Shown here: piece after piece, positions 1 to 48,384 of the stretch
Position numbering within the stretch: position 1 is the stretch's first letter
Layout of the letters: the number at the start of each line of letters is the position of its first letter
Assembly: GCA_051294905.1 (NCBI GenBank)
Contig: CM119372.1
Location: forward strand, 7,564,001 to 7,628,000
DNA length: 64,000 nt
Reading direction: 5' to 3'
DNA from: Botryllus schlosseri
Lineage: Eukaryota
Program-made: the position numbers and the translations under genes
The notes under the pieces: generated by a model
What the model saw: only the letters and a program-made list of their open reading frames with translations
Told to the model about the DNA's origin: nothing
Databases searched by the model: none

Positions 1-3000
1 TTCCTGTGGAATGGCGAGTCCTTTTTACCACTACGGTGAGTGGACTGGCTTCATCCAAATCGTATATAACAATGAATGATGAGTGTCGGTTATGTTGCTT
101 TTATCAGATTTGGTAGTCTTTTATTGGGGCGGGAAATGTAACCGTTATAGTGCAATTATATCCAGCATTTATATATATTTCAATTATTATTATTATTTAA
201 ATTACCAGCTTCATTTCCTGGCTACTGCTAAAACTCATTTGGGTATCTTATGGTTATTTTGACTGTTGCTGATATTATCAGATTGTATTCACATCGCAGT
301 TTGTTTGTGGTATTCGTGGTGTTTGTCGACTACTGTGGTCATTTACACCAAGCCAATTTTCTTCATTTTTATTCCGTTGCTGCCGGCTTGTAGCACGGCC
401 CACTTCTAGGCCTTTATAGACAGTTAGACACCGCTTACACGTATGAGATGGCAAGGAGCAGCCTAGATAAACCTCTAACGCTTAGGTAGGAGTTCTGAAG
501 TCGACCTCGGTCGGACTCGAACCCGCAACCTTAAAATCAGCTTCACGAGCCAATAATTACACAATCTCTGTTGACTATATGTTCCTGTCCGTGACCTCGT
601 CGATGGGGGAGTAGTCGTACGCGACGACGTAACAATGTGCGCAAATAGTAATATTCCCCATGTTATGACATTTGAAATCGTACATCCGCATAATAAGCCG
701 TTTCGTTAACTATGATTACGCCTCACCAAATAATGACATGGTTCACTTTAACCGCGTTGAAAACTTTTCTTCAATTTGTCGACCGGACACGAAATCCAAG
801 TGATAACTCGCAATAGAAAAGCAGACAATAATATACCGGAAATCGAAGGAAGTGGAATTCTAAATTAAGAAGTCACCGCTGACATTCGTGTCACTGCAAT
901 TTGTTATTGATATGGGATAATGGCAGAAACAATGAAACGACCAAGCGATAATGTAGGAGCATGGCAATTTGCCTTCGTTCAATATCAGCACAATTTGAGA
1001 GATGTGACGCGCGATAGTGGCTGATTCTGCCAAATTGGATTGGCGCAGTGACGGAGTTATCGGGTCGTTTCGAAACCGTAGCATGCGCTGCGGAATTGGT
1101 CGTTATGTTGAAATCTGGCTACAGTTAGGAATATGTAATAAAATATAATTTTCCATATTCAATGCATTATTCAATATAATTTGGGTATAATATTGCTTTT
1201 GTTATACAACTAACTATTATAAATCCGTATATTCTTTGGCTTATATCACAGCGATATTTGTACAAATGATAAAGGGATGGTGTGAACCTCTGAAAGGTTC
1301 AGGTTCGTGTGAACGCGAACCTTTTTGAAAGGTTCTGTGTGAACACGAACGTGAACCTCGTGACGTCATGTGACGTCATATTGCTACTTCCAACCCTATC
1401 TTCCAATGAAGTGATAGCCTATATTAATGTACACGATACCTAGCGAAGACTCGGTCCACATAATGACACAATGCTGAATTACATATCGGCGTTTTAAACG
1501 TCGCTTAATGTATCAACAGCGGTAATCAAAGGATATAATAATTGCGTAAAATCAGTACATTCCGTCGCTTTGCCAACAATTTCGACGAGGACTTACCAAG
1601 GAATATAAGCTTACGCCTTAACGGTCTTAGCCAGACCGGACAATGTGTTCGGAGTCTGAGTATTGCTACATTGATATTGAGCAGAGTGTACAACGGGTTT
1701 CAATACTCGCTACGGATACCACAAACAACAACTAGTTATGCAGCAGTAGCAAGCACCTTAATCGCACGGATTTGGTTTTAATGATACAGTAAAGATATGA
1801 AGTCAAGATTGACCCCGTACGCCCGTTCGATTTTTTACATCAGAAGACGATATCAATGTCATTGATTCGTTGAATGAATAAGCATCATTCGCTGACTACG
1901 TATATCGCTCGTGATGTTGTGTGATTGCGGGTCAAGCTCACAGCAGATAGTCACTAAATATTCACAAACGGAAAGCTGGTTATTCCGAGAACATTTTTGC
2001 AACAAAGCAACTAAAACTTTTAAGGTTGTCAAGGTGCATGGTGCATGCTCGTTAAGCGTTGATTTTTTATGCTGCCAGCACCATGCATGGAGTGGCCCGC
2101 AGTTGAAATGCAATAAATTTGAGCCAAAGATCTTATAATGGATTGAAAAATTACATTGAATTGAAAATTACAATTTACCAAAAGGTTCACAGTGCAGAAC
2201 CTACCAAGGTTCTGTTGTGAACACGAACCTCTAAATTTCCGAGGTTCACACACAGAACGCGAACGTGAACCTCACGTTCACACCATCCCTACGATCAATC
2301 CTAATTTGAAAATTTGGGAATCCTTAAAGTTCGCAGTGTCTCTGAAAAACGTGCATAACTAAAACACTAAAACAAGTTGAAAAGCACTTTTGGAATTGTG
2401 CATTTTAGCGGCCTACATGACATTATATAAAGACATCTGTTTCACGGTTGTTCCACCATGATATCATAGCTTCACTTGCAATGATTAATTATAATAGCAG
2501 TCTTGAACTATAGAGAAAGGGGTTGTGTGTTTTCATTTGTATATCACTATGGGCGTAAGGGAGTTTTGTACGCATAACCAAAGCATAAATTCACATTTGA
2601 TTGCTCTGCCTCACCGCAATAGATATAAACTTGAGATCCATCGATTAAATCGTGTATAGATTCGGGGTTGGTTATTCCAATGTAGGCTGGTACCTTTTCT
2701 TCTACCAACTCTGAATAATTCTCAGCTAGTTCTGAATTTACCATGTATAGTTATTAATCGCTTGACAATTAGAATCGGGGTGTCAATATCTATGAATTGT
2801 ATAGGAATTGCCAACATTCTGCATGTTAATAAACATATCGACACACGCGAAAATGTTTTGCTATAGCGGTGGGCCATCATGGTCGATAGAAAACGCATTG
2901 CCAAATGCTGAAGGTGTAAAGGTGCATATTTCTCGTACATCATGTGAAATTGCTTGTTTTGAAAGTCAACTTCCTTCTTGTCACGGAAAGTATGCCCACG

Positions 3001-6000
3001 CCTCCGAGAATATCATTTCGAACTAAGTGCGAATGTTTACAAAACTCGGCAAATCTCGAAAATTTTCCCAAATCCCTCCTTCCACTTTACCCCCGTATGA
3101 CTTAATTTGTTGGTGCGCAAATACGCAGGGGATTCGATTTTGAAGTAACGGTGCACGACCTTCAAGACATGGCCGGCGGACTTTGCGAGGCGGAAAAGCG
3201 ACTGCGAAGAATCTTATTTGGACTCAACAGCATCGCAGTAGAAATCACACCCATGATCACTGTGTTATTTCGAGAAGTACGTGATATTCCCTTACGCTGC
3301 GTGTTTTGGTGTCAACATCTACTTGGTGTAAGGTGACAAGAAGTGCTTATAGAGATACGACATTTCGCACATTCTACTTGACAAAGACGACTTCTATATT
3401 AATTCATACTTGCGTGCCTTGTATAATTGCCATTCCTGTGGAACTGTAAATCGAAAGCGTATAAGCTCATTTTTCAGCGATAGCTTTAATATTTCATGCT
3501 GGTGACGTCATATTTTGTGATACGATTGTTGATATACAATGTTCTTTCCAATTCTCTAAGTTGCTGACGATTACCCCTGACGAGTGTCAGCCGAAAATAT
3601 TCGGGTTTATTTCAATATGATATGATTCAATTGTATTTCGGAAACGCATTATAGTTTTTGATGTAGCCGATGCAATCTCTAAATTCCATTGTGAGATTAC
3701 GGTTTCAACAAGCGCGGGCGCATTTGTGTGATGTCATGGTCAGTGTTATCATGTGTTACGTAATATGGGTATTCTGAAATCCAGCCTTCCAATTCGATGA
3801 AAGATGTAATAGGGTAGCTAGATGTCTTATTTATTAGTTTATATACTTTGTTGGCCATATTTAACGGCCACTTACAAATGAATATGACTTTTATTTGTTA
3901 TGTTGATTCGAACACCTTCTTGGAGGTACATAACTGAGTGTGTGAAAGCTACCAATGTCTTACTTTTATTAGATAGGGATAATCAATCATGCGACTGTAT
4001 CCAAAACAGTCCCAGGTTTACAAAGCAACGACGCAATTCGATCTTCCCTTTCAGATTCTTCATCCGTTCTACATATTTCAATTATTCGCCATCGCAGTGT
4101 GGTGCGCGGACGAATATTATTCTTTACCGGCGGTCATCGTAATCACGTCAACAATTACCATTAGCTTATCGCTGTACCTCACAAGAAAGGTAAAGCGATT
4201 AATCAGTGTTTTGACAATCATCCATCATAATCATAATCACATGATTGTAGCAAAACCGAATGATTGCTAACATGTCATCCGGCAGCGGGCCGGTGCGCGT
4301 GTTGGTGAATGGTAATTTCGAAAAGCGCCAAAGTACCAAGTTACTGCCTGGTGACGTGATTGAAATCGAAGCCAATCAGACAACGGTGTGGTGCGACTGC
4401 GTTGTTCTGTCTGGATGCTGTGTCGTAAGCGAGAGCATGCTAACAGGTAAATTGAATCGAAATAATACTGTCACACACGCATGAGTTTAGTGTTACTCTT
4501 GACCTCCAACTGAACCCAATCAGACTGGCCCTGGAAAACAGTGCGATTTTGGGAAGCCTGGTTTAGAACCACTGATTTAAGCCGATACTTATTCACCCTG
4601 TAACTTTATAGCGACGATACAGTACACGCTGATCGAAATCAGTCTGTCGGACATATGTAAACTTTGTCTTCGAATGATTAATGTTTCAGGGGAAAGCGTG
4701 CCGGTCGTAAAGGGCCCGTTGGAGTCCAGTAATCCCGTCAACGATTACTACGACCAAAACCGCCATAGACAACACACTCTGTACGGTGGTACGAAAGTTC
4801 TGGATGTATATTCCAACCAAGGCACGGATCCCCCGCGAGCCGTTGTGATCCGTACCGGTACGTACTAAGCTGACTCCGCCGACCATTTAAGATATCAAAT
4901 TTTGCTGTCCTACTCTGTGGCATGGGTTCAGTCAGTGTGATCAAAGACGCATGTGTCGTACACCGTCCAAATTGGTAAATTATACACAGCTCAACTTCTG
5001 CATGTTAATTCCGTCTCAGTTGTTTCGTAATGGCGTTTCATTACTGAGAACATTGTCCCCCGCTCGAAAACATTCAATTTTTCACTAAAGTTGCTGCTCG
5101 AAAACATTCAAGTTTCCACTATAGTTGCTTGCGATTACCAATGACGATTGTCAGCAGAAAGTATTCGGGCTTATTTCAATATCGATATCATATATTATTC
5201 AATTGTATATTGAAGTTCAGTATCTCCAAGATTCTTCATTCTATTTATGCTTAACTCATGCCAATGGTATAATTAGGGTTGCATTTAAAACAAACGGTGT
5301 TTTAAAACACTTTGTTTAAAACATGTTTTAAACAGTGTTTTTAAAAAAGACCTTTTTAAAAAAAACAAAATTGTGTTTTTTCTAAGTTGTAAAATTATGC
5401 CATAAAAGTGTAAATTCTTTCCAAAAAACATGTTGTATGAGCCTACGGACAACTACCACCAGATATAGCCGACGTATATCGATATGAGGTTGTCGGAACC
5501 CTCAAAATATAGTCGGTTCAACATTAATAGTACAGATATTTCGTCAAAGGAGCTAAATTTACCCTATATTTTCAATTGTCAATGTCAATCCACTATGACG
5601 TCACAATTGAATATTCGTAACGTCATGCCTTAAAAAAAAACACGTTTTAAATTAGGGCCTTGTTTTAAATGCAACCCAAATGCGCCTAATGCATCCGCTT
5701 CAGAGTTGGACAACCCGGAAATTGTCAGTTTTTTTTTCAATTAGATTCGATGTTTAATTATAACCACGCAGTTTATTCCAAATCAGGACTAGAATTATAA
5801 TTATACCTCCGCAGTTTTTCCAAGTTAGATTAGAAATAGAATCATAGGTAGACATTCTTTCCAAATTAGATTAGAATAAGAATTATTGGATTCGCGAAAA
5901 CTTGGAAAGTGTATCAACTCCAGTTGATATCAAATCAGATTCAATCTCATAACCTTGGCTCGTTTCGCACTATATGCACAGTTCTCGAGAAACATTTTCC

Positions 6001-42973: not shown

Positions 42974-44144
42974 CACTGTTGCCCTACCTCGCCCAGACAT
43001 TGCTTCATTGATCATTTACTACCATTGTTTAATTTTTCTGTTATTTTCCTTTTTTTAACTAACATTTTTTTTACAGCCAGACTGTATAGAGTCAAGTGTG
43101 TAACACGAGAAATGGTCAAGTGATTGTGAGCCTCACAGCTCAGTAGTGCCCTCTCTGGTTGGATTTTCCCCTCGTGTCTTGATAGTCACTTGTTGAAGTT
43201 GAGTCGCTTTGTTGCTTGTAATATCATTGGATCAGTGATTGAAGTTAGGCTAAATTTAGTGATTCAACGTGCCATTTAGGGCATTATTTGTATTGTGTGA
43301 GTATTGTATAAGTTTAGGCCATCATTCAGGTGATTGTATTTTGTTTAGATTGTAAGTTTAGAGCCTAGAGAGTTAACTGTTGTTAACCGCTATTGTGACT
43401 GTTGCCTCGACGTTGACGTGATCTTTCTATGTAGTAAATTGCTATCCTATTCTGTAACTGTTTGAGTTACATTTGACCGGGTCTCAGGGGTAGGCTCGGA
43501 TTGTAGGAAGCAAAGAAAGCGAGGTGGTAGTCTCAATTCGAGTTGGCAAGCTACTCGACAAGCCTAAATTGTTACAGCCAAAACTCTAATCAAGTAAATA
43601 TAACGAACTATCGTTTGAGCTAGGCAACGACCAAAACGTCCGTTATATTTAAGTTAACAACAATCTCAGAAGTGATAGAAACGGTCGTCCACAGTTTGAT
43701 ATATCCAAGTCTATTGTATAGACTTGGCCATTGTTGAATATCAATTGCTGCAAGTGGAGTACCGGTATTGTACCATTGACAACTGCTAGTTGCATTCGAA
43801 GAGCTGACATTGAATTGATTGTTAGAATCAGCTTTAGTAGCAGTTGATACAAATTCGTAAGTCTATTGAGGCTGGTGTTCCCAATAGAAAATTTGACTGC
43901 TAAGCCAAGGGTTCTCAGCAGAAGTATTTTGCATTTGAATGAGATATAGGTTCTCATATGAGGCTAGTGTCCTCCATACATGAAATTGTCCTAGTTGTAA
44001 TTGAAAGTGGAAGCAAGTTCAGGAGTTGTTAATTGGCCCACCATATGTAATAAGCAAATTAGTTATAGTTCACGCCAGTCAAAACGGTAATGTGCAACTG
44101 AGGTTTCCAACGTCTCTCCAATTCGTAACTGATGAAAAACAACA

Positions 44145-45080
44145 ATGACCATGGCAAGAATTAAGTGTGTGTCTGAAGAAGAATTGATTCAGAAGTTGGC
44201 CGGACTGCATAGAAGATATGAAAGCATTGAACACGAAATATTGACCCGAGACGTAAACATCAATCTTCTGAGACATCAAAGTGATCTACAGTGTATGTTT
44301 CAAGAATATTCTACACTCTGGAGTTTATACCTCCTCGGAGTCGAAGATGATCTAGAAAAGATTGCATGTCATAAAGATCATGATAAACAAGTGAGATTTT
44401 ATCATGAATTCCAAACTAAGTTGGAGAGATGCATGCAAGAAAGATCGAAACATACACGTTCGAATTATATTGGAAGCAGTCGTCATGTGTCTCGGCGATT
44501 TGGAAATGCATATTCTGCCAGCATACATGATACTGTAAACGTGAAGAGAAAAGAAGCAATCATCCAAAAGAAAATGGCTCATTTGAAATTAGCTCATCAG
44601 TTCAATCGCGAAGTTTTGGAAGATGAGAAATTAATGATTGAACGTAAAACGTCACGATTACGATTGAAGCAAGACTTTGAACTTGCTTGCGTTGAAGCAA
44701 GTATTTGGAAATCCTCAGCTAACGTGCACAAGCTACATTCATACTCGCAGAAGAATACTGAAGAAATGCCTGTTTGTCAAGGTACTGCTCTGAAGCAAAG
44801 CAGTGTAAATACAGAGAATCCAGTTTCTCCTGCCCTCGTTGGACTTGCTGTGAAAGGCCTTGGCAACACTGCACAAGTATTTGTCAATGGGACAAGCAAA
44901 GACAAATCTGATGTGAAAGGTCAGGATGTGGAATGTCCAAGTAATTCTGAAGCTGCAGTATTCAATTCCACTGAAGTCGATGTTATCGTCGATCCTGTCA
45001 ATGCGTCACACCCAATTGAAGATTGCATCAATGCAAATACTTGTGTTCAGGACCTTGGTATTTTGAAAGGACAACGTTGA
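44145..45080 (+). CDS. LTR-element ORF1, 311 aa, gag-N-terminal-like coiled coil followed by low-complexity linker
   Basis: Open frame inside the LTR element. The Ser/Arg-rich tract followed by KRKEAIIQKKMAHLKLAHQFNREVLEDEKLMIERK...ELACVEA resembles BEL/Pao gag N-termini (pattern recognition only). Confidence 0.55.
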   Translation: MTMARIKCVSEEELIQKLAGLHRRYESIEHEILTRDVNINLLRHQSDLQCMFQEYSTLWSLYLLGVEDDLEKIACHKDHDKQVRFYHEFQTKLERCMQERSKHTRSNYIGSSRHVSRRFGNAYSASIHDTVNVKRKEAIIQKKMAHLKLAHQFNREVLEDEKLMIERKTSRLRLKQDFELACVEASIWKSSANVHKLHSYSQKNTEEMPVCQGTALKQSSVNTENPVSPALVGLAVKGLGNTAQVFVNGTSKDKSDVKGQDVECPSNSEAAVFNSTEVDVIVDPVNASHPIEDCINANTCVQDLGILKGQR

Positions 45081-45945
45081 GGACTGTGACACAGAATGTT
45101 CTCAAACCACAATGGTTAAATTTGACAGTGCTAGGTCTCGTAAATTTCCTGATATTGGAAAGGCGCTGAAATGTATTCCGGAAGACGTTCTCCATGTGAA
45201 CAGAGTTGATAATCATATTCCGGAAGATACATTGTTGTGTGAACACTCGGGTTGTTCACGTGATGCAAAGTTTGAAGGTGAAACCGAATCACCTAATGCG
45301 CATGATGAAGTATCAATACTTCACAAGTCAAGCCATCCTGATCCAACTGGTAATGGTCAGGTAGAAAAGATACCTGTGCAATTTGTGCATAGAGAAGTGA
45401 CAGGAAATCAATTCACATTTGAGAAACGATATTCTCTTGATGCCAATATTGAAAAGTTGATGACACAGGTGTCAATGGATTGCGCATTGAATTCAAAGAT
45501 TGAAGCATGCTCTCGTTCCATAACTGGTGACGATGGGATTCTCGATGTGAGTGCTAATTTCCAATCGCAATTGTTGAAGGATCCACAAGGGTATTCTGAC
45601 AGCACTGAGTTTGATGAAGAAGCATCTCTTTATAATGGGGCTTGTCTTCAAGAGCTTGCTCTGTTTGGTAGCATGGACAAATCAATGTTGGAGTTGGCTG
45701 CCATTTGGATTGGCACTGACATATTGTCATTATCCTTCTTTTATAAGGAGGTGCAAACCGAAACAGCTTTGGAGACCTTGAAGAAGATCGAGTGTCTGGT
45801 GAATGCCATTGTGCGATGTGGATCGAACTCCGATGTCTCCCAAAGAATAAGAGTGGAACCTTTCCTCATGGAGTTCCAGTTTTTCGTTCGTACTTGGTTG
45901 ATTGTACAGCCAGTAAACAGATGGTTGTTCGAAAATGTTACTTAA
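45067..45945 (+). CDS. LTR-element ORF2 (stop-free from 45067, first ATG 45112), C-terminal part resembles a degenerate BEL/Pao RT N-terminal region
   Basis: FDEEASLYNGACLQELALFG...GTDI resembles the BEL/Pao pattern VFDASAK.NG.SLND.LL.GP...ADI. No YVDD-like motif before the stop at 45945. Confidence 0.4.
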   Translation, partial: KDNVEDCDTECSQTTMVKFDSARSRKFPDIGKALKCIPEDVLHVNRVDNHIPEDTLLCEHSGCSRDAKFEGETESPNAHDEVSILHKSSHPDPTGNGQVEKIPVQFVHREVTGNQFTFEKRYSLDANIEKLMTQVSMDCALNSKIEACSRSITGDDGILDVSANFQSQLLKDPQGYSDSTEFDEEASLYNGACLQELALFGSMDKSMLELAAIWIGTDILSLSFFYKEVQTETALETLKKIECLVNAIVRCGSNSDVSQRIRVEPFLMEFQFFVRTWLIVQPVNRWLFENVT

Positions 45946-48384
45946 GACTGTTGATATATTTGAGAGATTTACTGAAGTCTCACCAACCTTTTGAAGAACA
46001 TTTGACCTATATTGATAGTGACATTGTGGCATGAGTTGATTGGTAATTTGAATTACTTTTCTTTGGCTTGATAATATCTCGTGCTATTGGGTTAAGTCGA
46101 TGTATTCTCGTAATTCCTACATCTGTGGGGGGGAATGTAACACGAGAAATGGTCAAGTGATTGTGAGCCTCACAGCTCAGTAGTGCCCTCTCTGGTTGGA
46201 TTTTCCCCTCGTGTCTTGATAGTCACTTGTTGAAGTTGAGTCGCTTTGTTGCTTGTAATATCATTGGATCAGTGATTGAAGTTAGGCTAAATTTAGTGAT
46301 TCAACGTGCCATTTAGGGCATTATTTGTATTGTGTGAGTATTGTATAAGTTTAGGCCATCATTCAGGTGATTGTATTTTGTTTAGATTGTAAGTTTAGAG
46401 CCTAGAGAGTTAACTGTTGTTAACCGCTATTGTGACTGTTGCCTCGACGTTGACGTGATCTTTCTATGTAGTAAATTGCTATCCTATTCTGTAACTGTTT
46501 GAGTTACATTTGACCGGGTCTCAGGGGTAGGCTCGGATTGTAGGAAGCAAAGAAAGTGAGGTGGTAGTCTCAATTCGAGTTGGCAAGCTACTCGACAAGC
46601 CTAAAAGTGTTACAGCCAAAACTCTAATCAAGTAAATATAACGAACTATCGTTTGAGCTAGGCAACGACCAAAACGTCCGTTATAAAGTGTACCTGTTTG
46701 ATGCGGGTGCGATCAGACAAGTTGACCCTCAAGGCCGTATCGATCATTCCTATCTAATACCGAATACTGTGCATGTATATTTTCTGTACCACGATCATTG
46801 CCGTCTGTTGTTATGTATTTTGGTTGGATGAAAATAAAGACTCTCTCTCTCTCTCTATCATTTGCATCCCATGATGCGTACGAATGCTCATATGATGTCG
46901 AAAATTGATACCTCCTGGGACGCATCATGAATCAAGCTCTCTACACCTTCCGCAGAGCTCAATTCGCAGCTTTTGACAGTCCATGCGAAAAATTACGACC
47001 GTTTTCACAACTGCTTACTTACTTGCGTAGACTTAAAGTCAGTCAATTCTGCTTCTACTTCAAGTAGTTTTAGGCTGCTTTTAAACTACTACTTCCACTC
47101 GTAAGTAAATTTTTGCGTCGCTACTTCTACTTTTACTTGAGTAGCTTTCTTGACTACTTTGACCACCTCTGTTCATATTGTTCATGAATGTTTCGTCACA
47201 ATTTCAATGAATGCATCGACTTTTTGTGTATTGATTGGTAAATATCGGCTTTCCAGCTGATAACATTGCAAATGACAGATATAAGCCAAGTGCGCGACGG
47301 GTGCAAATTTGGCTGTATAGGAAATGTTGTCAAATTCAGACATCACTGCCATATTCAGATATCAATTCAGATATCACAATTCGCTCATAATTACAGTAAC
47401 GATTTGCATCTTATGGTGCATATAGTAAATTCTGAGATAGGGCGTGAACAATGTGAACATTGAACAATGAGCATCAACCTATCAAGTCATTGCCACAGCT
47501 TTCCTTTCCCGCAGACTTCACCCTCGCTGTACTCCGCCGTTCGGATCTGTTTCTAGGACTAAGACACTAGGCAGCCTATGTAGGCTAAAGAATAAATTAG
47601 TGTTATTCGATCGTCGAAAATAGGATTAATACAGCATTAATAAAATTTCGATGATAGCGCGATTATGCGCAATGAGTCAACGTAGCCAACCTCGTCTCAG
47701 AAATATCGACCACGTTGATACAGATCAACTGAACTGAGCTGGAGCTTAGGATCTTCTCCGCTACGCTAGGTGAATTTCGGACCCAGCATATCATGGACTG
47801 TACCGGAAATTATTGACGGCGATTGGGAATAGAACATACAGAAAGAATGATGCATTCGCGGTGATGCGACAATGATTCGGAAAGTAGCCTCTGCAATATC
47901 AACTCGTTTGATGTCGTTCTGGTGAAGGTTAACTATTTCGAGTCAGATTCAGCGATTCGTATAATCCAATTTAAATACAAAAGATGTATCACAATCATTA
48001 TATTTTGTAATTTCTCGATTCAATATCAATTCAAAACACCACAAGAATTTCCATTCCATGAAAACAAAGGAGGTGAAGTCCAGCAATCAAATTCCCACGT
48101 TGGCCTACAGATATATATTATAGTAATGAAATATAATATTTAAAGCCATACACGATGCTACATAGGCTACACACTCAATGTGAAATAGCCTTCGAAAGAA
48201 GTTTGAAAAATTCAACCCGGCAATCCCAAAACACGCGAGAAAGCACCATGATAGACCGTTCGGATTTTGTCGTTGTTTGCGGTATTCGTGATGTTTTCGA
48301 ATCCAATGGGTATTTACACAACTCAAGGGAGGCCGATATTTTGTTACTATGATTTCGTATCTGTATACTTGTAGCACTTGTAGC

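What the first reader, a model, noticed from the sequence alone, without database searches (positions are those of the whole stretch)
43099..46685. Young, helper-dependent LTR element that keeps about 1.8 kb of open coding sequence, including an apparently dead RT-like domain
Seen: LTRs differ at only two sites, the TSD and PPT are intact, and the 2.5-kb interior has two long ORFs but no PR, RT, RH or IN catalytic motifs. Inference: ORF1 resembles a BEL/Pao gag N-terminus. The ORF2 C-terminus (EKRYSLD...GDDG...FDEEASLYNGACLQELALFG...TDI) traces the RT N-terminal region but is heavily diverged and ends before the YVDD motif. Strong divergence with open frames in a freshly transposed copy suggests a non-autonomous lineage whose protein has been repurposed (packaging, or hijacking or inhibiting a helper) rather than simply decaying.
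Basis: partly seen in the sequence, partly recalled or inferred. Interest (0 to 1): 0.7.

Follow-up and report, generated by a model that had tools for sequence, protein, structure and literature searches.

The report
Helper-dependent BEL/Pao retrotransposon, broken copy
This is one slightly older, frame-broken copy of a recently jumping, stripped-down BEL/Pao retrotransposon of a sea-squirt-like animal; the family keeps only the first part of its coat (Gag) protein under selection, followed by a long tail that stays open but is otherwise free to change, and the proposed dead reverse-transcriptase domain could not be shown.

Summary
The element is real: LTRs 43099-43647 and 46136-46685 (2 substitutions plus 1 single-base indel), 5-bp duplication AAGTG, polypurine tract, no pol domains. 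The two ORFs are halves of one family ORF of 602 codons, split here by a private 8-bp deletion after 45069.

The genome holds 16 full copies, each with its own insertion site. Ten have identical LTR pairs and 13 have the ORF intact; the three broken copies all have diverged LTRs.

The helper is a 7.1-kb BEL/Pao element with a 1910-aa Gag-Pol. It shares the LTR ends, primer-site core, polypurine tract and two leader motifs. Residues 3-212 match the helper's Gag N-terminus (34% identity) and are under purifying selection (omega 0.38).

Residues 213-602 evolve near neutrally (omega 0.9-1.0). Yet they carry no stop (about 11 expected) and no inherited frameshift, including in a 70%-identical relative from another sequencing project.

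RT similarity is not supported by Pfam, an exhaustive HMMER search or hhalign. Only a weak colinear trace to the helper polyprotein remains (p about 0.005-0.02).

The scan's first readers noted this family before on other DNA (s1-240574), and a similar one (s1-240516).

The parts
43094..43098 (+). 5' copy of the 5-bp target-site duplication (AAGTG)
   Evidence: same 5 bases at 46686-46690
43099..43647 (+). 5' LTR (549 bp), starts TGTAAC, ends GTTATA
   Evidence: about 75% identical over nearly its whole length to the LTR of the BEL/Pao helper L047, with the first 16 bases identical
43648..43667 (+). Primer-binding-site region. The core GTTAACAACA is shared with the helper and the Logan relatives. 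There is no TGG start, so it is not a canonical match to a tRNA 3' end.
   Evidence: predicted to pair with TGTTGTTAAC inside the LTR (about 43378-43387) in both this element and the helper
43672..43673 (+). Site of a 30-bp deletion private to this copy (5' leader)
43757..43769 (+). Leader island GAGTACCGGTATT (contains the palindrome TACCGGTA). It is exact in 15 of the 16 family copies fetched (no match in L045), in the Logan relative L051, in helpers L047-L049 and in the derivative L050. It is absent from the Logan helper L052.
   Evidence: no local fold support; a role as packaging or dimerisation signal is inferred only
44095..44107 (+). Leader island CAACTGAGGTTTC about 40-50 nt upstream of the start codon. 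It is exact in 15 of 16 family copies (no match in L045), the decayed C4 copy, both Logan relatives and all helpers.
44145..45069 (+).
44151..44780 (+). Gag N-terminal domain (residues 3-212). It is helical, homologous to the helper polyprotein residues 1-207, and under purifying selection.
   Evidence: homology; omega 0.38, p=3e-6; omega 0.47 against the Logan relative; helices, low confidence
45069..45070 (+). Site of the private 8-bp deletion that shifts the frame and splits the family ORF in this copy
45070..45945 (+). The frame is kept open in the family, but the amino-acid sequence is nearly unconstrained.
45946..46126 (+). 3' untranslated region; its last ~40 nt are homologous to the helper's sequence upstream of the PPT
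46127..46135 (+). Polypurine tract (GGGGGGGAA), preceded by CCTACATCTGT as in the helper
46136..46685 (+). 3' LTR (550 bp)
46686..46690 (+). 3' copy of the target-site duplication (AAGTG)

Best explanation
The stretch is one member of a 3.6-kb non-autonomous LTR retrotransposon family derived from the BEL/Pao superfamily. The family has no protease, reverse transcriptase, RNase H or integrase. It is copied and inserted by the enzymes of a related 7.1-kb BEL/Pao element (1910-aa Gag-Pol; loci L047-L049). It shares with that element the LTR termini, the primer-site core, the polypurine tract and two leader motifs.

The family carries a single 602-codon ORF. Its first ~212 codons are a diverged copy of the helper's Gag N-terminal helical domain and are kept by purifying selection. 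I infer that this domain helps the element's own RNA into helper particles, for example by joining the helper Gag assembly or binding the RNA in cis.

The remaining ~390 codons are most likely the in-frame relic of an internally deleted Gag-Pol. Their amino acids drift almost neutrally, but the frame is kept free of stops and frameshifts in the lineages that go on transposing. I infer that translation through to near the 3' LTR is what matters. One possible reason is avoiding nonsense-mediated decay of an RNA that would otherwise have a long 3' UTR. Another is keeping the nascent Gag domain tethered to its own RNA.

The window copy itself is a dead end. After insertion it lost 8 bp in the ORF and 30 bp in the leader.

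Shown: structure, family, helper similarity, selection pattern. Inferred: what the N-terminal domain does and why the frame must stay open.
For: Structure:
- LTRs, TSD and PPT.

Family:
- 16 full copies plus one decayed copy and two fragments.
- 15 of 16 copies have perfect, different 5-bp TSDs.
- 10 of 16 have identical LTR pairs, while copies differ from each other by dS up to 0.07. The divergence therefore arose in replicating lineages.

ORF:
- 13 of 16 copies are intact, at 602 aa (598 in one copy).
- The three broken copies are broken by private lesions, and all three have LTR differences. By my own count, Fisher p is about 0.02-0.04.

Helper:
- Pfam finds Peptidase_A17, DUF1759, RVT_1, rve, Integrase_H2C2 and DUF5641 in the 1910-aa ORF.
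- Its LTR is 75% identical, with the same first 16 bases, PBS core and PPT context.
- The two leader islands are shared.

Gag N-terminus:
- BLASTP E=2e-31; hhalign 98.8%.

Selection:
- IQ-TREE GY model gives omega N 0.38 (LRT p=3e-6), mid 1.02, C 0.84 (not significant).
- Against the 70%-identical relative P0001/L051, omega is 0.47 / 0.70 / 0.93.
- Omega shows no heterogeneity across residues 213-602 (p=0.87).
- Shared variants show no deficit of replacements there (39:8).

Open frame:
- 0 stops against 11.2 expected in residues 213-602 (P about 1e-5).
- Only one in-register stop occurs in all 16 copies, in the oldest copy.
- 0 inherited indels in 1806 bp of ORF, against about 10-11 in 1236 bp of LTR plus UTRs.
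- All lineage-level ORF indels are multiples of three.

The pair persists elsewhere:
- The non-autonomous element (SRR25569784) and the helper (SRR25569776, 1946 aa, omega 0.14) were both found in Logan assemblies.
Against: - No experiment or expression data.
- The helper is named by similarity only. Its LTR is 75% identical and its Gag N-terminus 34% identical, so a closer helper absent from this assembly cannot be excluded.
- The complex prediction for the two N-terminal domains gave no verdict.
- The AlphaFold2 model is of very low confidence, so the fold of the N-terminal domain is unknown.
- The reason for open-frame retention is untested.
- Omega of 0.84-0.93 in the C part has wide error. 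It could hide a few constrained sites or a mix of purifying and diversifying selection.
- The organism behind the Logan contigs is unknown, so 'another species' is not shown.
Confidence: 0.75

Rival explanations
1. The C-terminal part (ORF2) is a diverged, catalytically dead reverse-transcriptase N-terminal domain that has been repurposed as a protein, for example to package RNA or to hijack or inhibit the helper.
For: A chained alignment is colinear with gag end, zinc-knuckle region, pre-RT and RT. It places RVEP opposite the helper's YVDD and scores above shuffles (p 0.005-0.02). Another deletion derivative of the same helper clade (L050) keeps this region in frame.
Against: None of the single alignments is significant: E=8.7 and 0.33. 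Pfam RVT_1 and all other families are absent at E<=10. The exhaustive HMMER profile search finds no BEL/Pao or RT protein. hhalign against a 43-sequence BEL/Pao profile gives nothing in the C half. Omega is 0.84-1.0 without heterogeneity, which argues against any folded, functioning domain. AlphaFold2 gives pLDDT 20-45 and helices only where RT fingers and palm would have strands. The language-model recognition score is far below that of real families. Descent from the RT region remains possible (my odds about 0.5); function as an RT-like domain is unlikely.
Confidence: 0.1
2. The whole 602-aa protein is functional. Its C half is a fast-evolving, perhaps disordered, effector under mixed purifying and diversifying selection (an arms race with the helper or host), so that average omega is near 1.
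For: The frame is kept open. Some stretches are invariant in the 13 copies (for example residues 510-550). One 39-codon block shows Nd 21 against Sd 2 versus the Logan relative. Shared variants lean towards replacements (39:8).
Against: The heterogeneity test is not significant (p=0.87). The LRT for omega different from 1 is not significant. There is no predicted fold and no relatives. The invariant stretches also have low dS within the family in places.
Confidence: 0.12
3. The C half is captured host or foreign coding sequence fused to a Gag fragment, not a relic of Gag-Pol.
For: No significant similarity to the helper polyprotein beyond residue 212.
Against: No homologue in the element's own genome outside the family, nor among 1.84 billion representative proteins. 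The weak colinear trace to the helper and the existence of in-frame deletion derivatives (L050) favour internal origin.
Confidence: 0.05
4. The family is simply a dead, neutrally decaying deletion derivative whose open frames are chance survivors of a very recent burst.
For: This copy and two others are broken. Omega is near 1 over two thirds of the ORF.
Against: Copies differ by up to 7% at synonymous sites, yet 13 of 16 are open. A relative at dS 0.24 is open too. About 18.6 stops are expected over the whole ORF and none is seen in the intact lineages (P about 6e-9). There are no inherited frameshifts. Omega is 0.38 in the N-terminal domain.
Confidence: 0.02

Closest known systems
Autonomous/non-autonomous LTR retrotransposon pairs in which the non-autonomous partner keeps only Gag (RLG_Cereba / RLG_Quinta of wheat; PMC11302176)
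   Same: [quoted passage not shown] The non-autonomous member lacks pol and encodes a Gag-derived protein. It outnumbers or matches its helper and is recently active.
   Different: Those are plant Ty3/Gypsy elements with a predicted complete GAG. Here the superfamily is BEL/Pao in an animal. Only the N-terminal ~210 residues of Gag are recognisable; the DUF1759 capsid-like domain and zinc knuckle are not detectable. They are followed by ~390 open but unconstrained codons.
Non-autonomous Athila elements of Arabidopsis with intact ORFs under purifying selection (Marco and Marin 2008, PMC2410132)
   Same: Pol-less LTR elements that conserve open reading frames, with codon-based evidence of negative selection. 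This raises the same question of whether they contribute proteins to their own spread.
   Different: Athila ORFs (gag, env-like) show strong negative selection as whole proteins. Here selection on the amino-acid sequence is limited to one third of the ORF; for the rest only the open frame is kept.
LARD and TRIM elements (non-coding non-autonomous LTR retrotransposons; my own knowledge of the classes)
   Same: LTR, PBS and PPT are retained, there are no enzymes, and mobilisation is in trans.
   Different: LARDs and TRIMs have no conserved ORF. This family keeps a 602-codon frame.
The 622-aa 'Gag-remnant' non-autonomous BEL/Pao family noted by this scan in the same genome (s1-240516, unchecked by me), and the 4.7-kb / 1023-aa derivative L050 seen here
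   Same: Stripped-down BEL/Pao derivatives of the same genome whose leftover Gag(-Pol) frame stays open.
   Different: They are different families. L050 is 72% identical to the helper and still has DUF1759, the zinc-knuckle region and the protease region. The 602-aa family is far more diverged (34% in the only alignable part).

Membership tests
LTR retrotransposon (structural definition) | Two direct long terminal repeats flanked by a short target-site duplication | tested here: met
   549/550-bp LTRs, 99.45% identical; AAGTG on both sides; 15 of 16 family copies have perfect 5-bp TSDs
LTR retrotransposon (structural definition) | LTR termini TG...CA | tested here: inconclusive
   This copy and 8 others end TG...TA; 7 copies end TG...CA. 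Both types have TSDs, and both include copies with identical LTR pairs.
LTR retrotransposon (structural definition) | Polypurine tract directly upstream of the 3' LTR | tested here: met
   GGGGGGGAA at 46127-46135; same context in the helper
LTR retrotransposon (structural definition) | Primer-binding site complementary to a tRNA 3' end, next to the 5' LTR | tested here: inconclusive
   The sequence after the LTR lacks TGG. Its core GTTAACAACA is conserved in helper and relatives and is predicted to pair with an LTR-internal segment. No tRNA was matched.
BEL/Pao superfamily | Pol with Pao-type RT / Peptidase_A17, integrase and DUF5641 | tested here: not met
   No pol domain in the element. As a non-autonomous derivative it can be assigned only through its partner.
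BEL/Pao superfamily | Sequence homology of the remaining parts (Gag, LTR, PBS, PPT) to a bona fide BEL/Pao element | tested here: met
   Gag N-terminus E=2e-31. The LTR is 75% identical over about 450 bp plus the PBS and PPT flanks. The partner carries Peptidase_A17, DUF1759, DUF5641, rve and RVT_1.
Gag-retaining non-autonomous LTR retrotransposon with an autonomous partner | Recent transposition without its own enzymes | tested here: met
   16 copies at different sites with TSDs; 10 with identical LTRs; no pol
Gag-retaining non-autonomous LTR retrotransposon with an autonomous partner | An intact autonomous element with matching LTR ends, PBS and PPT in the same genome | tested here: met
   L047-L049, with 1910-aa open Gag-Pol. 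For L047 and L048 the two LTR copies show a 300-nt stretch at 100% identity. Motifs are shared.
Gag-retaining non-autonomous LTR retrotransposon with an autonomous partner | Complete Gag (capsid-like domain and nucleocapsid zinc knuckle) | tested here: not met
   No DUF1759 or zinc-knuckle match. Only residues 3-212 align to the helper.
Gag-retaining non-autonomous LTR retrotransposon with an autonomous partner | Purifying selection on the retained ORF | tested here: met
   Met for codons 1-212 (omega 0.38, p=3e-6). Not met at the amino-acid level for codons 213-602 (omega 0.9, not significant). The open frame itself is under selection.
Reverse transcriptase domain (Pfam RVT_1 / BEL/Pao RT), active or dead | Significant profile similarity to RT | tested here: not met
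   Pfam E<=10: none. HMMER against 1.84e9 proteins: none. hhalign: E=0.33 at best, in the pre-RT region.
Reverse transcriptase domain (Pfam RVT_1 / BEL/Pao RT), active or dead | Colinear remnants of RT motifs | tested here: inconclusive
   The chained alignment is colinear with the helper polyprotein, p 0.005-0.02 against shuffles. Individual blocks are not significant.
Reverse transcriptase domain (Pfam RVT_1 / BEL/Pao RT), active or dead | RT-like fold (fingers/palm) | tested here: inconclusive
   The AlphaFold2 model has mean pLDDT 31 and only low-confidence helices in residues 434-601. It was too poor for a fold search.
LARD / TRIM | Non-coding interior | tested here: not met
   A conserved 602-codon ORF

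The most novel reading that the evidence does not exclude
In single-ORF retroelements such as BEL/Pao, non-autonomous derivatives can spread only if their RNA is translated almost to the 3' LTR. Two thirds of this ORF would then be a 'translated spacer', selected purely for being open. Possible reasons are escaping nonsense-mediated decay, or holding the nascent Gag N-domain on its own RNA long enough for packaging in cis. This would explain why several independent stripped-down BEL/Pao families of this genome keep long open frames whose functional residues are gone.
Probability: 0.35. Interest if true: 0.65.

Novelty: new variant of a known kind. Interest (0 to 1): 0.45.

Why it matters
Non-autonomous LTR retrotransposons that keep Gag are known, mainly from plants. 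I found no description of one for BEL/Pao in the few full-text searches I ran.

What is unusual here is the clean split within one ORF. One third is under ordinary purifying selection. Two thirds show no amino-acid constraint, yet the open frame is strongly kept.

Because most copies have identical LTRs but differ from each other, the differences record evolution of the replicating lineages rather than decay after insertion. This makes the family a good natural system for asking what a parasitic retroelement needs from its own translation.

For the genome's annotation, the practical result is that the two ORFs of this window are halves of one broken transposon gene, not host genes, and that no RT domain should be annotated.

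Tried and rejected
- Pfam on ORF1, ORF2 and the intact 602-aa protein: only noise (GIY-YIG E=0.24, PrP8 E=0.15).
- AlphaFold2 on the 13-sequence alignment: mean pLDDT 31, so no fold search was run.
- Complex prediction of the element's N-terminal 205 residues with the helper's first 200: no verdict (score 0.07). This is not evidence either way.
- ESM Atlas: no usable hit for residues 213-602. For the N-terminal part, only unnamed ~200-aa eukaryotic clusters.
- hhalign with a deep BEL/Pao profile: nothing beyond the N-terminus.
- Local RNA folds around the two leader islands: not better than shuffles.
I did not try to get them another way.
- The first MAFFT run on 43 polyproteins timed out and was repeated with a faster setting.
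- The consensus lines that the alignment tools print by default were not used.
- Species identity: the genome is not Styela clava (best match of an S. clava BEL/Pao protein is 59%). Its size does not fit the published S. plicata assembly (419 Mb against 495.5 Mb). The organism behind the Logan runs was not identified.
- Literature searches for non-autonomous BEL/Pao elements, and for decay-driven ORF retention in LTR elements, found nothing specific.

Full report
**1. The observation**

The window holds two direct repeats of 549 and 550 bp, at 43099-43647 and 46136-46685.
- They differ by two substitutions and one single-base indel.
- They are flanked by the 5-bp duplication AAGTG.
- The 3' repeat is preceded by the purine run GGGGGGGAA.
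- The repeats start TGTAAC and end GTTATA, so the ends are TG...TA in this copy.
- The 2.5-kb interior has two forward ORFs of 311 and 277 aa. Neither has any Pfam domain, even at E<=10.

**2. The family**

A search of the window's own genome (495.5 Mb, 219 contigs) with the LTR gave 165 candidates. The 40 that were scored were 94-100% identical, and most lay in pairs about 3.07 kb apart.

Searches with the two ORFs and with a profile of the C half found exactly 16 full copies, one decayed copy on C4 and two small fragments on C1. I fetched the 15 other full copies.
- All lie at different sites.
- 15 of 16 have perfect 5-bp duplications, each with a different sequence.
- Ten have 100% identical LTR pairs and three have a single difference (L031, L037, L039).
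- The window copy has three differences and L044 has four. L045 has a damaged 5' LTR.

Yet the copies differ from each other by up to 6% in the LTR and by dS up to 0.07 in the ORF. The differences between copies therefore arose in lineages that were still replicating, not after insertion.

**3. One ORF, not two**

In 13 of 16 copies the two ORFs form a single frame of 602 codons (598 in L033).
- The window copy is split by an 8-bp deletion after 45069 that no other copy has.
- It also lacks 30 bp after 43672 in the leader.
- L031 and L044 are broken by private 1-bp insertions.
- L044, the copy with the most diverged LTRs, also has the only in-register stop seen in any copy.

All three broken copies have LTR differences, while 10 of the 12 intact copies with comparable LTRs have none. 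By my count, Fisher p is about 0.02. The lesions therefore came after insertion, and new insertions come from ORF-intact sources.

**4. The helper**

The ORF's first 212 residues match, at 33-36% identity, open frames of up to 1912 aa at several loci. I fetched four of them.

L047, L048 and L049 are near-identical 7.1-kb elements with a 1910-aa ORF. For L047 and L048, the repeat search found a 300-nt stretch of the two LTR copies at 100% identity. The ORF carries DUF1759, RVT_1, Peptidase_A17 (Pao), Integrase_H2C2, rve and DUF5641, so this is a complete BEL/Pao element.

What the helper shares with the 3.6-kb family:
- Its LTR is 75% identical over nearly the whole length.
- The first 16 bases (TGTAACACGAGAAATG) are identical.
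- The LTR end, the sequence just after the LTR (core GTTAACAACA) and the context of the polypurine tract (CCTACATCTGTGGGGGGG) all match.
- Two 13-nt islands in the otherwise unalignable leaders are shared. GAGTACCGGTATT (with the palindrome TACCGGTA) and CAACTGAGGTTTC are exact in 15 of the 16 family copies (none in L045) and in the helpers.

No closer Gag relative exists in this genome. The stripped-down family outnumbers this helper by 16 to 4 copies.

**5. What the protein is**

*Residues 3-212.* They align to residues 1-207 of the helper polyprotein (BLASTP E=2e-31, 34% identity; hhalign probability 98.8%). This lies upstream of the DUF1759 capsid-like domain. The region is predicted helical, but at low confidence.

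*Residues 213-602.* Nothing here is significant.
- BLASTP gives E of about 5 and upwards.
- Pfam gives nothing.
- An exhaustive HMMER search with a 390-position profile against 1.84 billion representative proteins returns only the family's own relative and a 63-aa fragment.
- hhalign gives at best E=0.33.
- hhalign against a 43-sequence BEL/Pao profile gives nothing.
- The ESM Atlas gives no usable hit, with a recognition score far below that of real families.
- AlphaFold2 gives pLDDT 20-45.

It falls in the pre-RT and RT N-terminal region of the helper (NA 387-518 against 836-955; NA 389-430 against 838-879).

An alignment that allows long cheap gaps runs colinearly through the gag end, the zinc-knuckle region, pre-RT and RT. 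It places RVEP opposite the helper's YVDD. Its score exceeds shuffled, locally shuffled and block-permuted controls with p of 0.005-0.02.

I read this as a suggestive trace of descent from an internally deleted Gag-Pol, not as evidence of an RT-like domain. A sister derivative, L050, shows that such in-frame collapses occur here. It is 4.7 kb with a 1023-aa ORF, 72% identical to the helper. It has gag, protease and the start of RT, joined to a stretch that aligns with helper residues 1387-1449.

**6. Selection**

With a codon model on the 13 intact copies (IQ-TREE, GY+F3X4, fixed tree):

| Codons | Omega | Test against omega = 1 |
|---|---|---|
| 1-212 | 0.38 | LRT p=3e-6 |
| 213-330 | 1.02 | not significant (p=0.95) |
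| 331-602 | 0.84 | p=0.35 |

The word search found one public relative, P0001. It is 596 aa, 70% identical, and comes from a Logan assembly of SRR25569784.
- Its contig is 83% identical in DNA through the LTR end, primer site, leader and ORF.
- Against it, dS is 0.24 and omega is 0.47, 0.70 and 0.93 for the three parts.
- Omega does not vary significantly along codons 213-602 (p=0.87).
- Variants shared by two or more copies show no deficit of replacements there (39 to 8).

For comparison, the helper and its Logan sister (P0003, 1946 aa, SRR25569776) show omega 0.14 overall and 0.15 in the Gag N-terminus.

**7. The open frame**

The open frame is nevertheless kept.
- At least 332 substitution events are visible in codons 213-602. 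About 3.4% of random substitutions there would make a stop. That gives 11.2 stops expected and none seen (P of about 1e-5). For the whole ORF, 18.6 are expected and none seen.
- About 10-11 indels are shared by two or more copies in the 1236 bp of LTR and untranslated regions. None is shared in the 1806-bp ORF.
- The ORF indels that separate lineages are all multiples of three.

Neutral decay is excluded.

**8. Mechanism**

*Shown.* This is a pol-less BEL/Pao derivative that has transposed many times very recently. An intact relative in the same genome has matching ends, primer site and polypurine tract. The element has a Gag N-terminal domain under purifying selection and a long tail in which only the frame is conserved.

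*Inferred.* The helper's integrase and reverse transcriptase act on the shared ends and priming signals. The N-terminal Gag domain promotes packaging of the element's own RNA. The tail must be translated.

I can offer two reasons for the last point. Both rest on general knowledge and neither was tested.
- A premature stop would create a 3' UTR of up to about 1.4 kb and expose the RNA to nonsense-mediated decay. The helper's single ORF ends 98 nt before its 3' LTR, and this family's ORF ends 190 nt before its own.
- A longer ORF keeps the nascent Gag domain tethered to its own RNA for longer.

The complex prediction for the two N-terminal domains gave no verdict.

**9. Comparison with known systems**

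Gag-only or ORF-retaining non-autonomous LTR elements are described for Cereba/Quinta in wheat (PMC11302176) and for Athila in Arabidopsis (PMC2410132).

This family works like those pairs, but it differs in three ways:
- the superfamily is BEL/Pao, in what earlier notes of this scan call a sea squirt (not checked by me beyond);
- only the N-terminal part of Gag is kept;
- selection on the rest of the ORF acts on the frame alone.

My searches found no description of a non-autonomous BEL/Pao family of this kind. That is weak evidence of novelty, because the library is limited.

First readers of this scan noted the same family on another piece (s1-240574). A follow-up agent described a comparable 622-aa family (s1-240516). 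I did not test those notes directly.

**10. Verdict**

It is wrong about this copy being open, and unsupported about an RT-like domain.

This is a new variant of a known kind, of moderate interest. The interest lies in the 'open but unconstrained' two thirds of the ORF.

Noticed in passing
window 43648-43667 with about 43378-43387; L047 about 1925-1945 with about 1665-1675: The primer-binding region has no TGG and does not look like a match to a tRNA 3' end. Its core GTTAACAACA is complementary to TGTTGTTAAC inside the LTR. Minimum-energy and centroid folds of the LTR-to-PBS stretch pair the two segments in both the element and its helper (z -2.0 and -4.0). This recalls self-priming elements such as Tf1 (my own knowledge). 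There is no covariation, and the RNA 5' end is unknown.
   Followed up: partly
LTR 3' ends of all 16 copies (window 46680-46685; L031-L045): The last bases of the LTR are polymorphic. Nine copies, including this one, end TA and seven end CA. Both types have 5-bp duplications and include copies with identical LTR pairs. A non-canonical TG...TA end therefore seems to be tolerated by the integrase.
   Followed up: partly
L050 (G000:C10:20447000-20455000), ORF 2673-5741 minus strand: A second stripped-down derivative of the same helper clade: 4.7 kb with a 1023-aa open frame. It is 72% identical to the helper through gag, zinc knuckle, protease and the start of RT, then joins in frame to a stretch that aligns with helper residues 1387-1449.
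   Followed up: partly
L051 (Logan SRR25569784) and L052 (Logan SRR25569776): Both the non-autonomous element (596-aa ORF, open) and the helper (1946-aa ORF, open) occur in assemblies of two neighbouring SRA runs of unknown organism. The pair therefore persists outside this genome assembly.
   Followed up: partly
G000, many loci listed: The genome holds well over 100 BEL/Pao RT-bearing loci. Dozens have open polyprotein frames of about 2000 aa in several families (32-53% identical to the helper's RT region), so the BEL/Pao population is unusually rich and apparently active.
   Followed up: no
L045 7889-8436 (G000:C12:26193888-26194435): A further full-length LTR of the family lies 3.7 kb from the C12 copy, in the opposite orientation. 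I did not determine whether it is solo or part of another element.
   Followed up: no
G000:C1:33970519-33970674 and C1:34002850-34002963: Two short fragments (38-52 codons, about 63-65% identical) of the C half of the family ORF lie 32 kb apart on opposite strands, outside any full copy.
   Followed up: no
G000:C4:16952419-16955205 (L046): An older, decayed copy of the family (64-87% identical at the protein level, several stops). It shows what the ORF looks like once selection stops.
   Followed up: partly
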